Below the pieces are notes generated by a model. The model was not told the DNA's origin and searched no databases. It was given only the letters and a program-made list of their open reading frames with translations. A stretch of 64,000 nucleotides of DNA, from positions 20,734-84,733 of the forward strand of contig CDMY01000410.1 of the NCBI GenBank assembly GCA_001179505.1, given 5' to 3'. Below, one piece after another: positions 4,954 to 43,819 of the stretch (within the stretch, counting starts at the first letter, position 1; every line of letters begins with the position of its first letter). Position numbers and translations under genes: made by a program. Source of the stretch: Vitrella brassicaformis CCMP3155. Lineage: Eukaryota > Protista > Chromerida.

Positions 4954-6900
4954 ATGTCGAAACAGCATGAGGTGAGAGAAGAGGAGCCAAGCAAAGCACG
5001 TGGTACATCGCGGCTGTGCGAAGCGGCTGCGCTGGGCTCTGTTTAATCGTGTTGTTTGTCCTGCGAACGCTCTTCAGATGTCAATGGCGGCGATGTGGGA
5101 GAAGCTGCTGTCCCAGGTAGAAGCCTTTCAGACCAATCAGGCGAAGGCAAGTAATCAGCACACTCACTCATTCAGTGCAATGCCATCCATCAGTCATCGG
5201 TTGGCTGCTTTGTGTTGTCTTGTGTGACGCTCAGGTCAACAGTTCCATCGACCGACTCTCTCAGATGGGCACCGCTATGATCACACCACTGGTGCGGACA
5301 GACTGCCAGTCAGTACACCACAGACTCACCCCTGTGTCATGATGCTCTCATTCATTCATTCTTCAGATGGTGGCCAAGGTCAGTCGTCAACTCGCCAACG
5401 AATCCGCCCGTCTAGCCGAGCTGGCGGACGGCATCGACTCCACCTTCGAACTCACAACACACACGCGCACAGGTGGGAAAGTGCACGCCTACACCAACAT
5501 GAGAGCCATAAGGACGTGGCTGCGTGATGGACACATGTCTGTCTGTATCACTTCAGGTTCAGCGGTTGCATCTGACAGACATCCCTGCCGACCCCATGAG
5601 CATCGTCATCGCGCTGTCTGACCTCACGACCATTGGCCGATTCAAATCGACAGCCCGACCCATCAGGAATGCCCTCCGGCCGATCGTGCGCCGCTTTCGG
5701 CTGCGAATGGCCATCGAGGTGGCGGGGCTGGGCGGTGTGGTGCGGTTCGGCGATAAGCTGAGCGACGGCGATGTGATGAAGGCCATGTGGGTGGTGGAGG
5801 AGGGGGGCGAGGGCGGCTGGGGGGAAGGTGGCCGACACACTCAGAGTCGCCGAGCGGTGCGGCAATTGCCAGCTGCCGGTCATTGTGGGTGCTGCGGATC
5901 TACAGGCACACGCCACCAAGGCGGTAAACACGACACACAGAAGAGGCAATGGGTGGGCTGTTGGATGTGTGTGTGTATTCTTCATTCAGGATTTCTTGGC
6001 GCTGCCCCGTTTCTGTGCGCAGTGGATGATCGTCGGCCGCCATGTGGCCCTCCGCCGCCCCACCGGCCAGCAAGACGGCACACTTCAGTTGTTCCGCCAC
6101 AGCAACATCGAGATCCGGATCATCCGCAACGAGCCCGGCTTCACCATCACCCTCAACCCGCCCCTCCCCCAGCCCACCCGCCCCATCCATCCCTTCTCGC
6201 AGCACCCCTTCACCCACCACGCCAAGCCACACGACCCGCCAGTCCGCTGCCGCATCCGGTGGCAACCTGGTGTGGGCTGGATGACGCTTCGTGTCAACGA
6301 CGGGCATGTTTACGCCTCGGCGAGCTCCGTGTTGAAGCGTCTGGTGCTGCGTCACCGGCTGTTGGCTGTGGGCGGCTTCACCTACTCGCCAGCAGTGGTG
6401 GTGGAGGGTGAGTGGTGGATGGAAGACACGCAATGAGAGGGCAAATGGCTATGTGGTGCGCTACTGATGTGTGTGTCAGGAGTGTACGTGGCGGCCACTT
6501 CGACCGCATCATCACCCAATCGCCGCACACGGCCCTCAACTCATCCTCGGATGTGCTGACATGGGAGGCGGCGAATGGGCGGTGTACACAGGTGCATATG
6601 CTCATTACGGCTGCCGATCCGTTCATCGCATGGATTAACTTTGGCATCCAGCCAGGCAACAGCCAGAGCGGTACGTATGCACATTGACAACCCATCCTCA
6701 GGCTGTCGTATCGTCTGATCCTGTGCTGTGCTATTGTCTGCACAAAAGCAGTTCACGTCAAGATTACTAATAGCGAGGCGCCAGCAGCAGGTGTCCCCCA
6801 TGACGCGTTCTTCGCACAGCGATTCCCTCGGACGGCCGCCAAGGTTTGTCGCGTCCTCGGGCCAATTGCCGCGATCGTGCTTGATGGCCAGGCGCCTTAG
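4954..6900 (+). CDS. Lineage-expanded F-box-like family protein, copy 1 (apparently intact)
   Basis: MSKQHE|MSMAAMWEKLLSQ... F-box-like LHLTDIPADPMSIVIALSDLTTIGRFKSTAR, then family blocks GGVVRFG, KAMWVVEEGGEGGWGE, CQLPV, HPFTHHAKPHDPPVRCRIRW, C-terminal IVLDGQAP*; same exon layout as four other copies in the window. Confidence 0.75.
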
Positions 6901-18159: not shown

Positions 18160-20160
18160 ATGGCTGCCAGTGCCGCAGCCCAGGTGAGAAGAGGGAGCTG
18201 CAGGCCAGGCAAATCCCTACATCATTGACGTGAATCTTTTGTGTTGTCTGTGTGGTTTGTCATTCGGTTTGGTACAGATGAGCGCAGCGATAGGGTGGCA
18301 GCTGCTGCCGCAGGTACAAGCCTATCGGCTGAAGCAGGCTCAGGTATCAGCTGACAACACACATACCGACTCGTCCATTCCATGCAGTGCATCCAAAGCT
18401 CATCGGCTGCTTGCTTCTGTGTGTGGGTGTGTGGGTGTGTGGGTGTGTGTGCAGGTCAACAGCTGCATCGACCAACTTCTGCAGATGGACACCGCAGCTT
18501 CGATGGCACCACTGGTGCGGCAGGCTGCCAAACACACCACACAACAGCACAAAGCCCTCTGTGTGTCTGTGGAGTCTCCTTTGCTTGGCGTCGCTCTGGT
18601 CGTGTTGATTCATTCGTCAGATGGTGGCCAAGGTGAGTCGTCAATTTGCTGCTGTGTCCGAGCTGCTGGCCGAGTTGGCAGAGACCATCAACTCGACCAT
18701 CGCACTCACAAGACACAGCCGCACTCATGTGAGCGGGGGAGTGACCACAGGCAGGCACAAACACAAGACCCACACTGATGTGGTGTGTTGTGCACCTCTT
18801 ATGTGCTGTTTGGTGTGTTTGCTGTGTGTCATCAGGCCCAACGGTTGCACATCTCTGACATTCCCGCCAACCCCATGAGCGTCATCCTGTCACTGTCTGC
18901 CCTCACCACCATTGCCCACCTCAAGGCGACAGCCCGCCACTTCAGAAACGCCCTGCGGCCCATCATCCGAAATATTTGGCTGCCGAAGGCCATCGAGGTG
19001 GCGGGGGTGGGCGGTGTGGTGCAGTTCGACAATCAGCTGAGCCACGGCGATGTGATGAAGGCCATGTGGGTGGTGGAGGAGGGGGGCGAGGGCGGCTGGG
19101 GGGAGGTGAGTGACACACTCAGATTCGGTGAGCATTTCGGCTATTGCCAGCTGCCGGTCACTGTGGGTGCCGGAGACCTGCAGACACACCCCACCAAGAC
19201 GGTAAACACGACACACAGAAGAGGCAATGGGTGAGCTGCTGGATGTGTGTGTGTGGTCTTCATTCAGGACTTCTTGGCGCTGCCCCGTTTCTGTGCCCAG
19301 TGGATGCTCGTCGGCCGCCGTGTGGCCCTCCGCCGCCCCACCGGCCAGCAAGACGGCACGCTTCAGCTGTCCCTTCACAACAACGAGATCAGGGTCATCC
19401 GCAACGAGCCCAACTTCGCCATCGTCATCAACCCGCCCCTCCCCAAGCCCAACAGCCCCGTCCATCCCTTCTCGCAGCACCCCTTCACCCACCACGCCAA
19501 GCCGCACGACCCGCCAGTCCGCTGCCGCATCCGGTGGCAGACTGGTGTGGGCTGGGTGACGCTTGGCGTCAACGACGGGGGCGTTGACGCGTCGGCGAGC
19601 TCCGTGTGGAAGCGTCTGGTGCTGCGTCACCGGCTGTTGGCTGTGGGCGGCTTTACCCAGTCGCCACCGGTGGCGGTGGACCGGTGAGTGGATGGACGGC
19701 ATACAATGAGAGGGTTAATGGCCATGTGATGTGTGTGTCAGGGGTGGGCGCGGCGGCCAACTCGACCGCATCATCATTCAATCGCCGCACATGCTCCTCA
19801 CCGAATGCTCGGACGTGATTGCGTGCGAGTGGGCCGGTGGGACCTGTGTACAGACGCATGTGCTGACATCATCGGACGACCCATTTATCGCGTGGATTTT
19901 CTTCGTCATCTTCCCAGGCGACAACCAGAGCGGTACGCACACACACACACTGACAACACATCCTCGTGCTGTCGTATCGTTTGATCATCCGCTCTCCGCG
20001 TCATCATGCAGTGCGCGTCTACATCACTACCACCGAGGCTGCAGCAGCAGGTGTCCGTCATGACGCACCCTTCGCCCAGCGATTCCCCCGGACGGCCGCC
20101 AAGGTGCGTCGCGTGCTCGGGCCCATCACCGCCATCGTGCTCGACGGCCAGGCGCCATAG
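18160..20160 (+). CDS. F-box-like family protein, copy 2 (apparently intact)
   Basis: MAASAAAQ|MSAAIGWQLLPQ...; LHISDIPANPMSVILSLSALTTIAHLKATAR; family blocks conserved; ends IVLDGQAP* at TAG 20158-20160. Confidence 0.75.
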
Positions 20161-36000: not shown

Positions 36001-39000
36001 CCAAGACGGTGGTCTTCACAAGCATCAAGAAGTGGGACGGGCAGGAGTTCAGGTGGATCAACAGCGGTAATTAAAGCAAAGCAATGATCTCACACACATC
36101 TGGACACCTGTGAGATCCTGTCCACCTCTCTGTCTGTTGGTGTGTTCAGGTGAGTACATTCAGATGAGTGGCCGGGCGGGCAGGAGAGGCCTCGATGACA
36201 GAGGTGAGGCGGGCAGGGAGGGAGGAATGCGATAGATGCATGCGCGTGGAGATGAGGCATATCATGTCATGCGCCGGATGAATGCTGTGTGGCTTGAAGG
36301 TTTCACGATCCTGATGTTTGACGAGCAAGTTGAGCCCGAGACGGCCAAGGGCATGTTCACAGGCCAGGCACTCAGACTCGACAGCCAATTCCACCTAGGG
36401 TGGGTACACACAACACAACACAGCACACACCACGGCTGGCTGCTCACTAGCTAAGAAGAGACCTGCAGGCTGTTCGTCCATCTCTCTCCTGTGTGTGTCA
36501 ATCAGTTACAACATGTTGTTGAACCTGATGCGCGTGGAGGGCGCCGACCCCGAATACATGATACAGAGGAGCTTCTACCAGTTCCAAAGAGACAAGTCAG
36601 GGAGGGACCTGACTGACCAGCCTACACACACACACACACCCCGACAGACAGGTGTGGATGTGTTCATGTCACGACCCCTGTGTGTGCCAGGCGTGCTTTG
36701 GGCATCCAGGAGCTCTGCAAGAAGCTCAAGGAAGAGGTCAACAGACGCACAAGCGCATACAGAGATACTGTGAGGGAGACGACGATCTGTGTGTGTGTGT
36801 GTGTGTGTGTGAAGGCTGAGGGCATGGAGGACATCGTCCCGCTTATCGAGATGCCCGAAGGTCACACACACACACACACACACATACAACAGACACACGC
36901 CACGCCACGTCACGTCAGGCAATGGATGTACTGCACGCGATTGCTGTGCTGTCATGCGTCGTCAGGTGTGGCGCTTCCCGACATCGACGTGAACAGGTCT
37001 GTCGCCGAGTACCACAAGCTCACCGAACGCCAAAACGCCCTCAGGTGGGAATGATGGACGATGAAATCGCCCACACCACACCACAGCCACCTGCTTCTCA
37101 CATGGGGGGTATATGTCTGGTGTGTGTGTCAGGGAGACTTACCGGTCGATCGTCATGCTCCCGGAGAACATATCAAGATACATGCAGACAGGTAAGTAAG
37201 ATCACCCCTTACCCCCCACACCCACCGACCCACACACACACACACACACACTCCTCCGCCCCTGCCCTGTCTGTGTGTCAGGCCGGATGGTGCATGTGGT
37301 CGACCAGGACGGCGTCGACTGGGGCTGGGGCATCGTTGCCGGCGCCGTCCGCAGGCCTCACAAGACGGCAGCAGCAGCAGCCCGTGACAGCAGCGGCAGC
37401 AGCAACCACCAGCAGCAGCAGCAGCAGTCATCCTCAGGCGAGTTCATCGTGGACGTGCTGCTCGAGTGCGACCTCAGGTCGACACAGACGGTCAGTGCGG
37501 TTCGGAAGCCGACGCCGGCGCGGGCAGGTCAGGAGAGAGTGGTGGAGGTGATGCCCGTGTCGGACAGCTGCATCCACGGCGTGGCCAAGATGCGGGCCAA
37601 CCTCGGCGACATCAACTACAAAGAGGCCTCGGGCAGAGCTCATGTGAGTCCGTTGGGGGACCGGTGGGTGTGCGGGGGAGTGCTATGCGTGGGGATCGAT
37701 CCTCTCTGTTGGTTTGTGTGCGTGTGTGTGTGTGTGTGTTAGGCGAAGATCACTATGGAGAAGATCCGGGAGCGTTTTGACGGCTCCCCTCCGCTGCTGG
37801 ACCCCATCAGCGAGATGGGGCTCGACGGCATCACACTCCAACCTACCATTGAGTGAGTGAGAGAGGGAGAAGTGCATTGAGAGGGGGGAGGGGGACAGTG
37901 ACGGCGGCCGTGCGTCACATACATACTCATGTGTGTGGTCTCCATTCATTCAGCAAGCTGAAGCAGTGCGAGAGCGACATCGCCAGCCATCCGCTGCACA
38001 ACCACCCCCTCCTCGACAAGCTGCTCGACAAGTGCACACACACACACACACACACCATCAGCCCCACCACACGCGCCGCGCCCACTCATCGTCCATGTGG
38101 CTGGCTGCTCTGCAGGTACCGTGAGCGCCTCGATCGGGAGGAGCAGGTCCGCGGCCTCGAGACGGAGCTGGCGGGCCACCGGTACCTCGTCATGAAGGAC
38201 GACCTTCGGGCCATGCGCAAGGTGCTCAAGCGGCTGCAGTACGTCGATAAGGACGGCGTCGTGACGCTCAAGGGGCGGGTGGCGTGCGAGATCACCACCA
38301 CCGAGGAACTGGTCGTCACAGAGCTGCTCTTCAGGAACACTTTCCAGACTATGGAGGTCCATAAGCACACACAGAGAGAGGGAGGGAGGGAGGGAGGGAG
38401 AGGGAGGGAGGGAGAGGGGGATGAATGACACACGCGTCATGTGTGTGTGTGTGTGTGTGTGGTGTGTGTCAGGCTGACCACATGGTGGCGACGTTGAGTG
38501 CGCTGTGTTTTGACGAGAAGATCGAGGACCATGTCGACCTGCACCCTGAGCTCGCCAAGGGGTTCGACCAGATCAAGGTGGGCGGGCGTCCCGTCCATCC
38601 ATCCCCACCCACCTGCCCTGCGTCCGTGTGCTCATCGGGACTCTGTGTGTCCTGGCATGGCCTGGATGCCATCCTGCCTGCAGGAGGTGGCCAAGATGAC
38701 AGCTGAGGTGTCGGCCGAGAGCAAGCTGCCCATCAAAGTCGACGAGTACCTCGAGAAATTCAAACCAAACGTCTGAACACACAGACACACGCGCGAACAA
38801 CACACGCAGCCCCTGTCGCTGAACAAGCCAAGCCACATTTTTGTCTGTCCACATGTGTGTGTGTGTGTGTTTAGTTGATGCCTGTGGTGCTTCGGTGGAT
38901 GCGCGGCGAGAGTTTCAAGGACGTCATCGACGGCACCGGGCTGTTCGAGGGGTCCGTCATCAGAGGGATGCGGTCAGACACTTCCACACACGCACGCACT

Positions 39001-39287
39001 GCCCCACCCTCCCTCCCTGTCTGATGCTCTGTCGGTCTGTCCGTCGGCGATTCGCTGCCATGCCGTCTATTCTATCACCAGGCGACTTGAGGAGCTGCTG
39101 AGACAGCTGGCCGCTGCGTCCAAGGCCATCGGTGCGCCACACACAGAGCCACTGATGGGTGTCCGCATGTGTGTGGATGGAGTATGTATGTGTGTGTGCA
39201 GGCAACGACGAGATGGAGGCCAAGATGCGGGAGGGCGTTACCAAGCTGAGGAGGGGCATTGTGTTCGCCGCATCGCTGTATTTGTGA
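33042..39287 (+). CDS. MTR4: MTR4/SKIV2L2 DExH-box RNA helicase (nuclear exosome cofactor)
   Basis: [111 protein letters not shown], arch/KOW region, FEGSVIR, C-terminal [11 protein letters not shown]. Confidence 0.97.
34366..34665. other. Assembly gap (300 N) within an MTR4 intron
   Basis: Run of N. Confidence 1.
35648..35721 (+). tRNA. tRNA-Ile (anticodon UAU), intronless, nested in an MTR4 intron
   Basis: Cloverleaf: GCTCCCT/AGGGAGC acceptor stem, GCTC-AGTTGGTTA-GAGC D arm, CGAGT-CTTATGA-GCTCG anticodon arm, GACGG-TTCGAGC-CCGTC T arm; followed by TTTT (Pol III terminator-like). Confidence 0.95.
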
Positions 39288-39710
39288 GCACGACGGGACG
39301 GGATGGGGGCATGGGGGACACACAACACATGGACGGACGGACGGCTGATGAGGGAGGGTGCTGTGCTGGACTCGTTCGATCCGTCCACTGGTTAAATGGG
39401 TATAAAACGTCCTTCCTAGTCACTAGACACACATGCACTTATATAGAAAGGGGCACACATGCACTGCACACCGACTAAACACACACACAGACACAGACAG
39501 CATACAAATAAGACACACACGATCTTTAGATTAGAGGGATGGATGCATTCGGACGACATACATACATACGGTCACCAATAAAGTACACACACGCACACAC
39601 CGTCGAAGCATCTCGCGCATCGCCGCCACGCCATCGGTCAAAATCAGCCCGCCAGGGCGGGCCGTCTGCCTATCTACACAAAAGTAATGAATTGAACGGT
39701 CAGGATGGCC

Positions 39711-41211
39711 TCACCAGACGACCGCATCGATGGCCGGGCACGTCAGCACCAAAAAGGCGCCTGCGCACACAACACATCCCGACACACAATACCCATCCAT
39801 CCATCCGTCATTCCCTCACCTCACCCACCTGTGCGAGGCATGTATCGCAGAACGGCCCTCATGACGCACCTCGCCACTCCCCGGTTGCTTCCCTCATGCC
39901 GATGGGCCACATGCGCATTCACAGGGCTGCCGTCGACGGTGCTTGAGACGGTCGAGATGGAGGGGCTGGCCAACGGCTTGCTGGCCATCGGCACTGCCCG
40001 CGGCGCAGCTGCTGGGATCTGCTGCTGCCTGGGGGCCTTGCGTATCGACTGCGCCACTACCCAAAGCAGCCATATGAAGGCCTGAATGAGATAGATGAGA
40101 GCACAACGCGTGTGTCTGTGTCCGTGTGTGTGAGAGAGAGTGTAGTGTGTATCTCTGCCTGCTTACATCGTCATTTGATGGCGCGTGTGGGTGGTTGCTG
40201 GCAGCGTCGATGCTGACAGTGACGGGCAGCTCACATGACCGGCACTGACCCACCAGCACCAACACGCGCTTCATCCACCACCACCCATTCCCTGGCCCAT
40301 GCCCCACCTCAACCACACTCAAAGCAGCCCTCAGCTGCCGACCCACCAGCCACTTGTCGAACCGGACGACGCCAACCAGGCCATGTGACTCCGTTGCGGC
40401 CACCAGTGGCTCCATGTGGGCATCCCTGACCCAGCTGCCGCACCGGCAGAGTCGACACATGCTGCGGCCGTCCAGCAGAGTGAACAGTCGCCGGATGATG
40501 GATGTGGGCAGCTGGTGAACAGACGCATGGAGGGTGTCGGGACTGGGGGAGCTGCTTGGTAGAGGGGCGCTTGATGGCCTCAGCAGGACGAACCTCGGCA
40601 GCACACCTGCACACAGCACAGCCACACAAAGGCACATGCATGACACACAGACACACACGCCGCCCGTGTGTCAGTCACTGCTGTCACTTACCGAACTCGT
40701 CAAGGATAGAGAAGCATCCCTTCGGGAGGCTTTGCACATCGTGATTACCTGGCAATGATCACATCACATACACACACATGGCATGGCAACAGACATGTGG
40801 TATGTCAGTCATCACAGCAGACAGACATGTGGTGTGGTCAGACACTGAGTACCATCGAAAGGTTCCCACAAGACGGTCCCATTGCGTGCCCCAGAGACGA
40901 CGTACTTGTAGTGAATACGTCCTGCGGCGGGCAGCAGCACCTCGGTGGAATTCCAGACGGGGAAACTGTCGCCATCTGTTGTCAGCACCACTGCTTTGCG
41001 AGTGTCCCAGCTGCCCAGTGCATCGTGACTCCCAACGACGCCAAGCCGGTCACCTGCATGACAGTGGGCAGCGCAGCGTGCCACAGATCCATCACATATA
41101 GATCATCCTGTGTGCAGCCAGCGAGTCTGACAGCTGGGTGAACCAACCGGGTTGCGTGATTGTGCATTTGCACTGAAAGGTCAGCGATGTGGTCCCTGAG
41201 CCACGCACCAT
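39711..41211 (-). CDS. CBM20 (starch/glycogen-binding) domain fused to a divergent F-box-like family domain
   Basis: Exons 41211-41148, 41053-40853 and 40748-40692 splice in frame to LTFQCKCTITQPGDRLGVVGSHDALGSWDTRKAVVL..FPVW..IHYKYVV..VLWEPFDGNHDV (CBM20 pattern); then VHQLPTSIIRRLFTLLDGRSMCRLCRCG (F-box-like) and GLVGVVRFD..CELPVTV, matching the expanded family; probable stop TGA 39713-39711. Confidence 0.75.
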
Positions 41212-41291
41212 GAGGCGGCACCGCCCTCATTCGCGAGCTCAAGCTTGCGACGAGGCAAGGGTAGCGCACAACAACAGCGGCAAAGGCAGCC

Positions 41292-42681
41292 ATGATGAGA
41301 GAGCCGCAGGTGGCTCCTCTTTCTGCAGCCGCTGCGGCAAGTACCGAAGCACCCGGCACTGAGTTGCAGGAGGACAAAGCGGACGAGGCTGAGCAGCAGG
41401 AGGCATGCCAAGATCCCAAGCTCAACACCAACAAGCGGCCGAGGCTGTCTACACCACAGCAGATGCACCCCACATGCGGCAAGATTGCCAGCAACATCGT
41501 CCCTCCCTTCCTCGCCCATCCCTATCATCATGCCCCTGGCGCCCAGGCAGCAGCGTCAGCAGCAGCAGCTGCCGCTGCGGCCTCCATTTTGCCGCCCGAG
41601 ATCTTCGGCATGCATCCCATGGGTGGTCTGGTGAGTGAGGCCGAGAACGTACTGGTCGTGGCTGCTCTGGCCGAGGAGCGGCGGAAGAACCAGCAGCTGA
41701 GGGCCCGCGTGAGAGAGCTGGAGGGGCAAGGTGAACACAGACCATTCACATGACAGGGAGAGGGAATGGGCGGGCCATCTGTGACTTTCGTGTGTCAGTT
41801 GAGGAGCTCAAGCAGCGTCTGCACATGATGATGTCGAGCCGGTCGCGTGACGACCAAGCGATAGAGGAGGCCACCAAGCGGTTCCAGTCGCTGCACTTCT
41901 CGACCGTCCTCTGCGACCTCACAATGAGAGATTGCCCTATGGTGAGGATCGAGGAATGGGTGCAGCACTGCAGTGGACAGCGTGAACATGCACCATGACG
42001 GCCGGTTGTTTGTGTGTCTGCACACAAGGTGGCGGTGAGCAAGGGATTCTGCGAGTTGACGGGCTATGAGCCGTGGCAGCTGATAGGTACACACACTTAA
42101 TACATGGACATCGATCATCCCATGTGCTGTGCGGGGGATTCTGCCTGCAGGGGTCAATTGCCGGCTGCTACAGTGCGACCAGACGTCGACGGAGACGGTA
42201 AGAGAGATCCATGACTACGTCGACCGACTCAAAAACGCCACAACTGTACAGATGCATGAGGACCTCGTGGTGAGTGACAGAGACAGACAGACAGACAGAG
42301 AGAGAGTAGGGAAGGCTTCGATACTGCATATTCTGTTTTTGCGCTTGTGTGCCTATCTGGGTGTGCGCATGTCAGGTGACGATCTTGAATCAGCGTCGCG
42401 ACAAGAGTACCTTCACGAATCTGCTGCACATCTCGCCCATCTTTCTGGGCGGAAAGCTGTACCTCATCGGCGTCCAGTCGGACGTCACCGGCTGCAAAGA
42501 CGACATCGACACGCACAACAAAACCACCAAGACACTCATCAGAGAGGTAACACTGGGGCGCCCAGCGACCTCTCTGCTGATCGATCTATCCATTCATCTG
42601 TTGCTGTGTGCTTTGTGTGTGGTTCAGGTGATCAAGCAACTATTTGAGGCGGGAATTCCTCAGAGTGAGCTCTGCATCTGA
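41292..42681 (+). CDS. Leucine-zipper + LOV (PAS) blue-light photoreceptor
   Basis: Heptad L-x6-L-x6-L (QQLRARVRELEGQVEELKQRL); LOV core STVLCDLTMRDCPMVAVSKGFCELTGYEPWQLIGVNCRLLQ..ILNQRRDKSTFTNLLHISPI..YLIGVQSDVT assembled from six GT-AG exons; stop 42679-42681. Confidence 0.88.
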
Positions 42682-43819
42682 CCTGAAGGCCCGGCGATCG
42701 AACGGACAAGACCTACGTGCGTGTGTGCGGCGTGTCTGTGTGTGTATAATGGCGTGTATGTGTATATTACGGTGGGTGGTCTGTTCTGCAATGCATACTG
42801 AGCACGTGTGGGGGCCCTGCGCTGTGTGCCAGTGGTACTCGCTCGGGGGCCATTTGGGGAATACCATCCGGATCAATGCACACACCATTCATGCATACGT
42901 CCATGTGGGCCGACTGAGCTCTTTTGATTGGCGTGACGTCTAGGGGTGTGTGCACGTCACCTGTCTGCGTGTCCGCGATAGATGGACAGTCGGCCACCCA
43001 CCCACCCACCCACCCACCCACCACACCAGACCACACACCACACCACACCACATCGCATCTGTCTCCTCTCCTTTTTGAAGCACCTACGGAGTCCATCCAT
43101 GTGAGCGTTTTTGGCGAGTGAGTGAGTCGGGAGTGTCGCAGTGTGTCGGTCAGCGAGCAAGAGAGGAGAGGCAGTCCGACTTTGTTGACACAAGCAGCAT
43201 ACACACACAAAAGATAGATTCATCCATATACAGAGGAGGGGAGAGAGTTGCGCGTGCATGTGTGCGTGAATATGGTGCGTGTGAGTACTGTGAGGGCCGG
43301 GAGGGACTTATGACTTGTGGGCGCCCTCGATATTGACGAGTCTGTCGTTTGTGAGGCGTTGTGGCACAAAATGTACGTCCGTACCTACACACACATAGCT
43401 GCTGCAGACTGTGTGTACCTATGGCCGCTATTGTATGGCCGCAGCCATATGGATCGATCGAATGATTGACTGATGGACGATCGAGTGACTCATCCATCCA
43501 TCCATCTCATCCGGCTCGTCCATCCATCCATCGCCCTCCTCTCCTTCACTCACCCCGCATCCATCGCCTTCACTTCCCTCCCCCTCTGCCCCTTAAAATT
43601 TGCCACCTTCATCGCTCGCCCGTCAGCTCATCACGTGTGTCCAGCCCTTGGGCGGTTGGGGAGGGGGAAGAATTTGAAATGAGGCTTGCCAGGAAGAATT
43701 TTGAATGTTTGTCGAGAATTCTCGCCGGGAGACAGGGACGACGTTTGTCATTCAGTGATTTTCTTACCATTTCTCAGCAGATTTGGAGCAGCCTGCGCTG
43801 TTTTTGCCCCTCTTCACCA

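What the first reader, a model, noticed from the sequence alone, without database searches (positions are those of the whole stretch)
39711..41211. CBM20-F-box fusion: candidate starch-granule-targeted ubiquitin ligase adaptor
Manual splicing joins a CBM20 (GS..LG.W, FPVW, YKY, WE motifs retained) to an F-box-like motif and the family's C-terminal domain, with consistent phase-1 introns. CBM20 targets proteins to starch or glycogen; the laforin (CBM20-phosphatase)/malin (E3) pair links such targeting to ubiquitination in animals. A single-chain CBM20-F-box would be a different solution, bringing an SCF ligase to amylopectin granules, the storage polysaccharide of chromerids and coccidians. It has no signal peptide, consistent with cytosolic starch. 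I am not aware of this architecture being described.
Basis: partly seen in the sequence, partly recalled or inferred. Interest (0 to 1): 0.75.

Follow-up and report, generated by a model that had tools for sequence, protein, structure and literature searches.

The report
Starch-binding head on F-box-like protein
This alga (Vitrella brassicaformis) really makes one mRNA joining a starch-binding module to a member of an alga-only protein family whose docking motif resembles, but is not proven to be, the F-box that plugs proteins into ubiquitin ligases.

Summary
A six-exon minus-strand gene (41211..39711, all GT-AG) encodes 354 aa. It is identical to the public Vitrella brassicaformis CCMP3155 protein CEM11162.1 / A0A0G4FDA8, named only "CBM20 domain-containing protein". 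An environmental relative keeps the whole gene (89% aa identity, dN/dS 0.31).

Residues 8-93 are a clear CBM20 (60 bits; cut-off 23). Residues 137-247 belong to a Vitrella-only family: a family-only HMM gives 33.5 bits, against 10.5 for the best of 5000 shuffles. Five paralogs lie in this window.

The F-box itself is not established:
- Pfam F-box_4 scores 14-18 bits (cut-off 32).
- The hit disappears in the orthologue, where LP is LT.
- A 37-member family profile finds no F-box protein in the PDB.
- The fold model is poor (pLDDT 49).

Best reading: a cytosolic adaptor tethered to starch, possibly for SCF (about 0.4). A non-SCF scaffold is nearly as likely.

No paper describes this architecture. 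Sugar-binding F-box proteins and a CBM20-bearing E3 (RNF213) are known precedents. The scan has noted this same stretch of this genome before (s1-205730, s1-221690), not other DNA.

The parts
41148..41211 (-). Exon 1: start codon at 41211, residues 1-21 plus the first base of codon 22. Holds the first strand of the CBM20.
   Evidence: In-frame TGA at 41229-41227 upstream.
40853..41053 (-). Exon 2 (phase 1-1): the core of the CBM20.
   Evidence: On its own it scores Pfam CBM_20 50.7 bits. Joints 41148/41053 and 40853/40748 are seen in contigs.
40692..40748 (-). Exon 3 (phase 1-1): the end of the CBM20 region, residues 89-107.
40735..41190 (-). CBM20 starch-binding domain, residues 8-93 (span includes introns 1 and 2).
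   Evidence: PF00686 60.3 bits, E 1.6e-16. Closest PDB CBM20s have E 4e-9. dN/dS 0.22.
40167..40606 (-). Exon 4: Pro/Ser-rich linker (residues 108-135), F-box-like motif and most of the family core.
40419..40523 (-). F-box-like motif, residues 136-170 (L140-P141, then predicted helices 142-151 and 154-162).
   Evidence: F-box_4 E 0.003-0.04, 14-18 bits against a cut-off of 32. Helices from an AF2 model at pLDDT 56-71. P141 is nearly invariant in the family alignment but is T in the orthologue.
40019..40418 (-). Core domain of the Vitrella-only family, residues 171-275 (span includes intron 4).
   Evidence: Family-only HMM 33.5 bits against 10.5 for the best of 5000 shuffles. Colinear alignments. 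Shared phase-0 intron position at the core's 3' end.
39829..40081 (-). Exon 5: end of the core, a low-complexity stretch, and the start of the conserved tail.
39711..39760 (-). Exon 6: the last 16 codons and the TGA stop (39713-39711).
   Evidence: 98% nucleotide identity to the orthologue.
39361..39710 (-). 3' UTR, at least as far as contig X1 record 1 reaches.
   Evidence: table 8.

Best explanation
This is a genuine, expressed and conserved gene for a 354-aa cytosolic protein. Its layout is:
- an N-terminal CBM20 starch-binding module (residues 8-93);
- a Pro/Ser-rich linker (108-135);
- a divergent copy of the head and core of a Vitrella-only gene family (136-275), which starts with an F-box-like helix motif;
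- a unique, conserved tail (276-354).

Proposed mechanism. The CBM20 anchors the protein on the cytosolic starch that surrounds the pyrenoid. The F-box-like/core module then recruits a partner, most plausibly SKP1-cullin. The protein would thus act as a starch-surface receptor of an SCF ubiquitin ligase, marking starch-associated proteins, or conceivably the glucan itself.

Shown: the single transcript, CBM20 identity, family membership of the core, conservation under purifying selection, and absence of an N-terminal targeting extension.

Inferred: starch binding, F-box fold, SKP1 binding, and any ubiquitylation.
For: Transcript and annotation:
- One spliced transcript in three studies.
- Identical to annotated CEM11162.1.

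Conservation:
- The orthologue on contig L001 keeps all six exons, at 89% aa identity.
- dN/dS is 0.31 overall, 0.22 for the CBM20 and 0.25 for the F-box-like stretch.

CBM20:
- 60 bits, with both conserved Trp, the YKY Lys and the GN Asn retained.

Pointers to an F-box:
- F-box_4 is the top Pfam hit for the C-terminal part (E 0.003-0.04).
- One other family member hits PF00646 at E 0.17.
- UniRef names family member P0024 'F-box domain-containing protein'.
- Language-model features place paralog P0004 next to F-box/SPRY clusters (0.93), and P0002's C-terminal part weakly next to F-box clusters (0.77-0.78).
- AF2 puts helices directly after L140-P141, with F-box-like spacing.
- P141 is >=90% conserved in the family.

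Context:
- Starch is cytosolic in Vitrella.
- Forced recruitment of an E3 to glycogen through a CBM20 causes glycogen ubiquitination (PMC13345935).
Against: - No F-box model reaches its cut-off (best 17.8 bits against 32).
- The orthologue's exon 4 gives no F-box hit at E<=10, and has LT where Vitrella has LP.
- 35 of 37 family sequences give no F-box hit at E<=1.
- The family profile finds no F-box protein among 177,635 PDB sequences at E<=10.
- The AF2 model is weak (pLDDT 49), and Foldseek and VIA-align give no F-box match.
- The CBM20 sits N-terminal to the motif, and the family's own large C-terminal domain is missing.
Confidence: 0.4

Rival explanations
1. Starch-tethered scaffold with no SCF role. 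The CBM20 places a lineage-specific protein-interaction module on starch, in the manner of STBD1 or plant PTST proteins. The 'F-box-like' helices are either a degenerate relic that no longer binds SKP1 or an unrelated helical motif.
For: - All curated F-box tests fail or are marginal.
- The core and tail have no relatives outside the Vitrella lineage in an exhaustive search of 1.84 billion representatives.
- The LP motif is not conserved in the orthologue.
- Two CxxC pairs (158/161 and 229/232) are conserved only in this gene and its orthologue, which hints at a different structural solution.
Against: Several weak, partly independent pointers all name F-box rather than random families.
Confidence: 0.35
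2. The CBM20 is not a starch anchor here. It binds another alpha-glucan or a soluble malto-oligosaccharide, or acts as a regulatory or protein-binding module, so the protein works away from the granule.
For: - CBM20s occur in non-amylolytic proteins with other ligands or unclear ligands, for example RNF213 and GPCPD1-type proteins.
- By my recollection of glucoamylase numbering, the site-2 tyrosine seems not to be retained. This was not tested with a tool.
Against: - The conserved site-1-type residues (W37, K71, W84, N90) are retained in both species.
- Starch is the dominant cytosolic glucan in Vitrella.
Confidence: 0.1
3. A recent exon-shuffling by-product of a fast birth-and-death family. 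It is transcribed but has no specific function.
For: - The family is large, clustered and reshuffled: five paralogs lie in this window.
- The CBM20 exons are phase 1-1 and therefore easy to shuffle.
- The gene is a singleton in its architecture.
Against: - The whole ORF and all splice sites are conserved in a relative whose synonymous divergence (dS) is 0.18, with dN/dS 0.31 and 0.16 for the last 39 residues.
- It is expressed in three studies.
Confidence: 0.1

Closest known systems
Laforin (CBM20-phosphatase) plus malin (RING E3) of animals
   Same: A CBM20 brings a ubiquitin-ligase activity to a storage glucan (PMC9844227, listed). Laforin homologues occur in alveolates (PMC2064834, listed).
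   Different: That system uses two proteins, a RING E3 and a phosphatase domain. This gene is one chain with no phosphatase or RING, and its ligase link is only an F-box-like motif.
RNF213 (giant E3 with an N-terminal CBM20)
   Same: One polypeptide combines a CBM20 with ubiquitin-ligase function (PMC11549300).
   Different: RNF213 is about 5200 aa (size from my own knowledge), with dynein-like AAA, RING and RZ modules, and is proposed to bind pathogen ligands. It is not an SCF adaptor, and there is no sequence relationship beyond the CBM20 fold.
Sugar-recognising F-box proteins (FBXO2/Fbs1, Fbs2; plant F-box-Nictaba and PP2-type) - from my own knowledge
   Same: An F-box is joined to a carbohydrate-binding domain, so that SCF is aimed by a glycan.
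   Different: They carry an FBA/SBD or lectin domain C-terminal to a canonical F-box and bind N-glycans. Here a CBM20 lies N-terminal to a sub-threshold motif, and no FBA domain was found.
STBD1 / genethonin-1 and plant PTST proteins (non-enzymatic glucan tethers)
   Same: A small protein whose CBM (CBM20 in STBD1, PMC4076837) anchors a protein-interaction module to glycogen or starch.
   Different: The partners differ: an Atg8-interacting motif in STBD1, and coiled coils that bind starch synthases in PTST. There is no homology to residues 108-354.
ZTL/FKF1/LKP2 (LOV - F-box - Kelch) - from my own knowledge
   Same: A ligand- or signal-binding domain is placed N-terminal to the F-box.
   Different: These have a canonical F-box and a Kelch substrate domain, and they are light sensors rather than glucan binders.
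Vitrella-only 'F-box-like head + core + large C-terminal domain' family (P0004-P0044)
   Same: Residues 137-247 match a family-only HMM (33.5 bits). The order of motifs and the phase-0 intron at the end of the core are shared.
   Different: Identity is only 23-34% (mostly 26-31%). The family's coiled-coil-like N-terminus is replaced by CBM20 plus linker. The ~250-aa C-terminal domain is replaced by an unrelated 79-aa tail.

Membership tests
CBM20 (Pfam PF00686, CAZy CBM20) | Profile match above the curated cut-off over most of the domain | tested here: met
   60.3 bits against a cut-off of 23.3, residues 8-93 on profile positions 2-85 of 97. PDB CBM20s match down to E 4e-9.
CBM20 (Pfam PF00686, CAZy CBM20) | Conserved aromatic and polar glucan-contact residues (two Trp, Lys of YKY, Asn of GN) | tested here: met
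   W37, W55, K71, W84 and N90 are present and identical in the orthologue. Their assignment to binding site 1 is from my knowledge of glucoamylase and laforin, not tested here.
CBM20 (Pfam PF00686, CAZy CBM20) | Binds starch or amylopectin | not testable with these tools
   Needs a recombinant-domain pull-down on amylopectin or Vitrella starch.
F-box (PF00646, PF12937, PF15966) | Profile match above the curated cut-off | tested here: not met
   The best match is F-box_4 at 14.3-17.8 bits against a cut-off of 32, E 0.003-0.04. The orthologue has no hit at E<=10.
F-box (PF00646, PF12937, PF15966) | LP motif followed by the hydrophobic pattern of three helices | tested here: inconclusive
   L140-P141, then I144, I145, L148, F149, L152, M157, L160 and W166 fit with a one-residue shift. 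The Pro is >=90% conserved in the family but is T in the orthologue.
F-box (PF00646, PF12937, PF15966) | Three-helix F-box fold | tested here: inconclusive
   AF2 with a 37-sequence alignment predicts helices 142-151, 154-162 and 169-181, at pLDDT 56-71 over residues ~130-181 and 49 overall. No F-box appears among significant Foldseek or VIA-align matches.
F-box (PF00646, PF12937, PF15966) | Family profile recognises solved F-box proteins | tested here: not met
   hmmsearch of alignment A3 against the PDB finds no F-box protein at E<=10.
F-box (PF00646, PF12937, PF15966) | Binds SKP1 | not testable with these tools
   No multimer prediction or binding assay is available here.
Vitrella-only F-box-like family (P0004-P0044) | Core region matches a family HMM built without this protein | tested here: met
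   P0002 scores 33.5 bits (residues 137-247) and the orthologue 40.3 bits. The best of 5000 shuffles scores 10.5 bits.
Vitrella-only F-box-like family (P0004-P0044) | Shared intron at the 3' end of the core exon | tested here: met
   There is a phase-0 intron after NDD|AFI here, and after TK(T/A)|DFLALP in P0004 and P0011.
Vitrella-only F-box-like family (P0004-P0044) | The family's ~250-aa C-terminal domain | tested here: not met
   A family C-domain HMM gives no hit above the shuffles. hhalign probability is 1.6%.
Sugar-recognising F-box proteins (FBXO2-type) | FBA/SBD glycan-binding domain | tested here: not met
   No FBA family appears in the Pfam scan at E<=10.

The most novel reading that the evidence does not exclude
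A single-chain, starch-granule-resident SCF substrate receptor. The CBM20 parks an F-box protein on cytosolic starch, so that SCF ubiquitylates starch-metabolising enzymes, or the glucan itself, at the granule surface. This would be a one-protein counterpart of laforin-malin, arising independently in a chromerid alga from a lineage-specific F-box repertoire.
Probability: 0.3. Interest if true: 0.7.

Novelty: new variant of a known kind. Interest (0 to 1): 0.45.

Why it matters
If the motif does bind SKP1, this would be a natural example of a ubiquitin ligase aimed at a storage polysaccharide by a built-in starch-binding module. That matters in the lineage that gave rise to apicomplexan parasites, where amylopectin turnover controls cyst biology. 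It would parallel laforin-malin and the recent engineered CBM20-E3 recruitment that ubiquitinates glycogen.

Even without SCF function, the gene gives a handle on starch-surface biology in chromerids. It also shows how the large Vitrella-only F-box-like family swaps its heads.

The public annotation records only the CBM20. The family membership of residues 136-275 is new information.

Tried and rejected
- Word-index search of residues 105-354 found only the protein itself and the ENA orthologue fragment.
- Exhaustive phmmer of residues 105-354 against 1.84 billion representatives added only P0003. That is a 2925-aa repeat protein whose 13 weak stretches (about 28 bits each) sum to E 1e-10. I judged it a short motif or compositional match, not homology.
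- phmmer of the C-terminal part against the PDB gave only aquaporin-10 at E 0.36.
- Single-sequence AF2 of the whole protein was useless (pLDDT 34).
- AF2 with the family alignment reached only pLDDT 49. Foldseek and VIA-align on it gave nothing above noise.
- The Atlas lead that the family is F-box/SPRY (0.93) could not be confirmed. There was no SPRY hit in Pfam for 19 C-terminal domains and no PDB hit for their profile.
- Two metagenome scans for more orthologues found none.
- Homology between the tail and the family's C-terminal domain was rejected.
- A RING-like reading of the two CxxC pairs was considered and dropped, because the spacing does not fit. This is my own judgement.

Full report
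**Gene model and transcript**

The exons are 41211-41148, 41053-40853, 40748-40692, 40606-40167, 40081-39829 and 39760-39711. All five introns are GT-AG and 68-104 nt long. Introns 1, 2, 3 and 5 are phase 1; intron 4 is phase 0.

I laid contigs of four public runs on window 38400-43400. One 1422-nt record of X1, and longer records of X6 and X7, carry the six exons contiguously. These come from three studies. The joints are 41148/41053, 40853/40748, 40692/40606 and 39829/39760. The junction 40167/40081 follows from adjacent record coordinates.

The spliced form can only come from RNA, so the CBM20 exons and the F-box-like exons are one mRNA. The contigs end at about 41218-41226. An in-frame TGA lies at 41229-41227, so the ATG at 41211 is the start. 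This leaves no N-terminal extension, because the CBM20 profile begins at residue 8.

**Identity of the organism and public annotation**

A word-index search with the ORF that contains exon 4 returned a 354-aa protein of Vitrella brassicaformis CCMP3155. It is identical to my model. Its accessions are CEM11162.1 and UniRef100_A0A0G4FDA8, and it is named only "CBM20 domain-containing protein". The gene model is therefore already public. The part after the CBM20 is un-annotated.

**Orthologue**

The same search found an ORF fragment on an ENA metagenome contig (L001, sample ERZ893784). L001 is collinear with window 41230..37823 at 82% nucleotide identity.

All six exons and their GT-AG boundaries are preserved. 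They give a 356-aa protein that is 89% identical.

| Region | dN/dS |
|---|---|
| Whole protein | 0.31 |
| CBM20 | 0.22 |
| F-box-like stretch | 0.25 |
| Last 39 residues | 0.16 |

The fusion is therefore maintained by purifying selection in a second lineage. Two further metagenome scans found no more relatives.

**The CBM20**

Pfam CBM_20 scores 60.3 bits (E 1.6e-16; cut-off 23.3) over residues 8-93. Exon 2 alone scores 50.7 bits.

The closest solved structures are the CBM20s of maltotetraohydrolase, glucoamylase, CGTase and beta-amylase, plus STBD1.

The residues W37 (LGSW), W55 (FPVW), K71 (YKY), W84-E85 and N90 are present in both species. From my knowledge of glucoamylase and laforin these correspond to glucan-binding site 1. 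That mapping was not tested with a tool.

A 2026 preprint reports that Vitrella stores amylose-containing starch in the cytosol, wrapped around the pyrenoid (10.64898/2026.09.25.754361). A cytosolic CBM20 protein therefore has an obvious ligand.

**The C-terminal 250 residues: family membership**

The following searches left this part an apparent orphan:
- word-index search;
- exhaustive phmmer search of 1.84 billion representatives;
- phmmer against the PDB.

The one extra hit, P0003, is a repeat protein matched 13 times at about 28 bits each. I regard it as spurious.

However, tblastn inside the window revealed weak colinear matches to five other loci. Their coordinates are 5367-6406 (+), 18621-19684 (+), 26841-25802 (-), 32272-31817 (-) and 63020-62161 (-). 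A paralog exon hits our exon 4 at E 8e-6.

A profile search seeded with these loci retrieved about 40 V. brassicaformis proteins of 109-465 aa, plus one JGI fragment.

I then built an HMM from family members only, without this protein or its orthologue. It scores P0002 at 33.5 bits (residues 137-247) and the orthologue at 40.3 bits. The best of 5000 shuffles of the C-terminal part reaches 10.5 bits.

The alignment is colinear from the F-box-like motif through GVVxFD, VVE.G..G.GW and CxLPVTV, into the first ~20 residues of exon 5. The phase-0 intron at the end of the core is in the same place in the paralogs P0004 and P0011.

The family's own long C-terminal domain (~250 aa) and its coiled-coil-like N-terminus are absent here. 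Residues 276-354 are unique, but they are conserved with the orthologue.

**Is the motif an F-box?**

Evidence for:
- F-box_4 is the top Pfam hit for every fragment tried (E 0.003-0.04).
- One other member hits PF00646 at E 0.17.
- UniRef names member P0024 "F-box domain-containing protein".
- Language-model features put paralog P0004 beside F-box/SPRY clusters at 0.93. They put this protein's C-terminal part beside F-box clusters at 0.77-0.78, which the tool rates as leads only.
- AF2 with the family alignment predicts helices 142-151, 154-162 and 169-181 right after L140-P141, in the best-scored part of the model.
- P141 is at least 90% conserved in the family.

Evidence against:
- All scores are far below the curated cut-off (32 bits).
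- The orthologue has LT in place of LP, and its exon 4 gives no F-box hit at E<=10.
- 35 of 37 family sequences give no F-box hit at E<=1.
- The 37-sequence profile finds no F-box protein in the PDB at E<=10.
- The model is poor (mean pLDDT 49), and neither Foldseek nor VIA-align returns an F-box above noise.
- The SPRY lead for the family's C-terminal domain was not confirmed.

I put the chance that this is an evolutionary F-box at about one half, and the chance that it still binds SKP1 at about 0.4.

**Mechanism**

The supported part is a cytosolic protein that can sit on starch through its CBM20 and that presents a lineage-specific interaction module.

The most specific hypothesis is a starch-resident SCF receptor (confidence 0.4). 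A non-SCF starch-surface scaffold is almost as likely (0.35). Smaller shares go to a non-starch role of the CBM20 and to a functionless chimera. The latter is disfavoured by conservation and expression.

**Comparison with what is known**

Full-text searches found no paper that describes a CBM20 joined to an F-box, and no paper that mentions this protein's accessions.

Related principles are known:
- Laforin targets malin to glycogen (listed).
- Human RNF213 is an E3 with its own CBM20 (PMC11549300).
- Forced CBM20-mediated recruitment of HOIL-1L ubiquitinates glycogen (PMC13345935).
- Glycan-binding F-box proteins (FBXO2 type, F-box-Nictaba) exist, by my own knowledge.

I therefore rate it a new variant of a known kind, conditional on the F-box being real.

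**Earlier notes of this scan**

Notes s1-197158, s1-201670 and s1-246545 describe a Vitrella-only family with a worn-down F-box and swappable heads. My independent profile tests agree with that picture. This gene would be a member whose head is a CBM20.

The same stretch was also noted in s1-205730 and s1-221690, in the same genome.

Noticed in passing
window 5367-6406 (+), 18621-19684 (+; = P0004, 18160-20157), 26841-25802 (-; = P0029), 32272-31817 (-), 63020-62161 (-; = P0011): Five paralogs of the Vitrella-only F-box-like family lie in this 64-kb window. The copy at ~5.5 kb changes frame between two HSPs. The copy at ~32 kb has an in-frame stop in the aligned stretch and no match to the downstream exon. 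Both may be decayed.
   Followed up: partly
window 40607-40691 (intron 3) and 40524-40606 (linker codons): Intron 3 is 92-98% identical to the relative's, as conserved as the exons. Introns 1, 2, 4 and 5 fall to 28-69% identity in parts, although the 5' half of intron 1 is about 90% conserved. The adjoining linker codons have dS 0.04 against 0.18 overall. If intron 3 were retained, the reading would stop two codons after exon 3 (GGT AAG TGA), leaving a CBM20-only product. This may be a conserved regulatory or alternative-splicing element.
   Followed up: partly
window 41227-41312; L001 1-2920: This gene's contigs end at ~41226, and the divergent neighbour's contigs (the + strand gene that another note calls LOV) start at 41261-41312. 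The shared upstream region is therefore under 90 bp. In the environmental relative, collinearity stops at window 41230, and neither blastn nor tblastx finds the neighbour upstream. The head-to-head pairing is not conserved there.
   Followed up: partly
P0002 residues 158-163 and 229-232 (window about 40440-40457 and 40233-40244): Two CxxC pairs (CRLCRC and CRSC) are conserved with the orthologue. The family members lack the first pair, and only some have both Cys of the second. This could be a lineage-specific metal site bridging the F-box-like helices and the core.
   Followed up: no
P0003 (2925 aa, origin unknown) against P0002 residues 233-280: A repeat protein carries more than 13 copies of a motif resembling ..DDA.(F/Y).(W)V..Q...K..R.QQ, found at the exon 4/5 junction region of this protein. 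Each copy scores about 28 bits. The sum gives a misleading E of 1e-10.
   Followed up: partly
window 38575-39201 (+ strand) and 39201-39760: In runs X6 and X7 a single contig runs from the + strand downstream gene (introns 38575/38682, 38971/39081, 39130/39201) into this gene's 3' UTR. The convergent transcripts overlap or abut at their 3' ends.
   Followed up: no
P0004 (paralog, window 18160-20157): The Atlas language-model search places this family member beside nematode F-box/SPRY and diatom SPRY clusters at 0.89-0.93. Pfam and PDB profile searches of the family's C-terminal domain did not confirm SPRY.
   Followed up: partly
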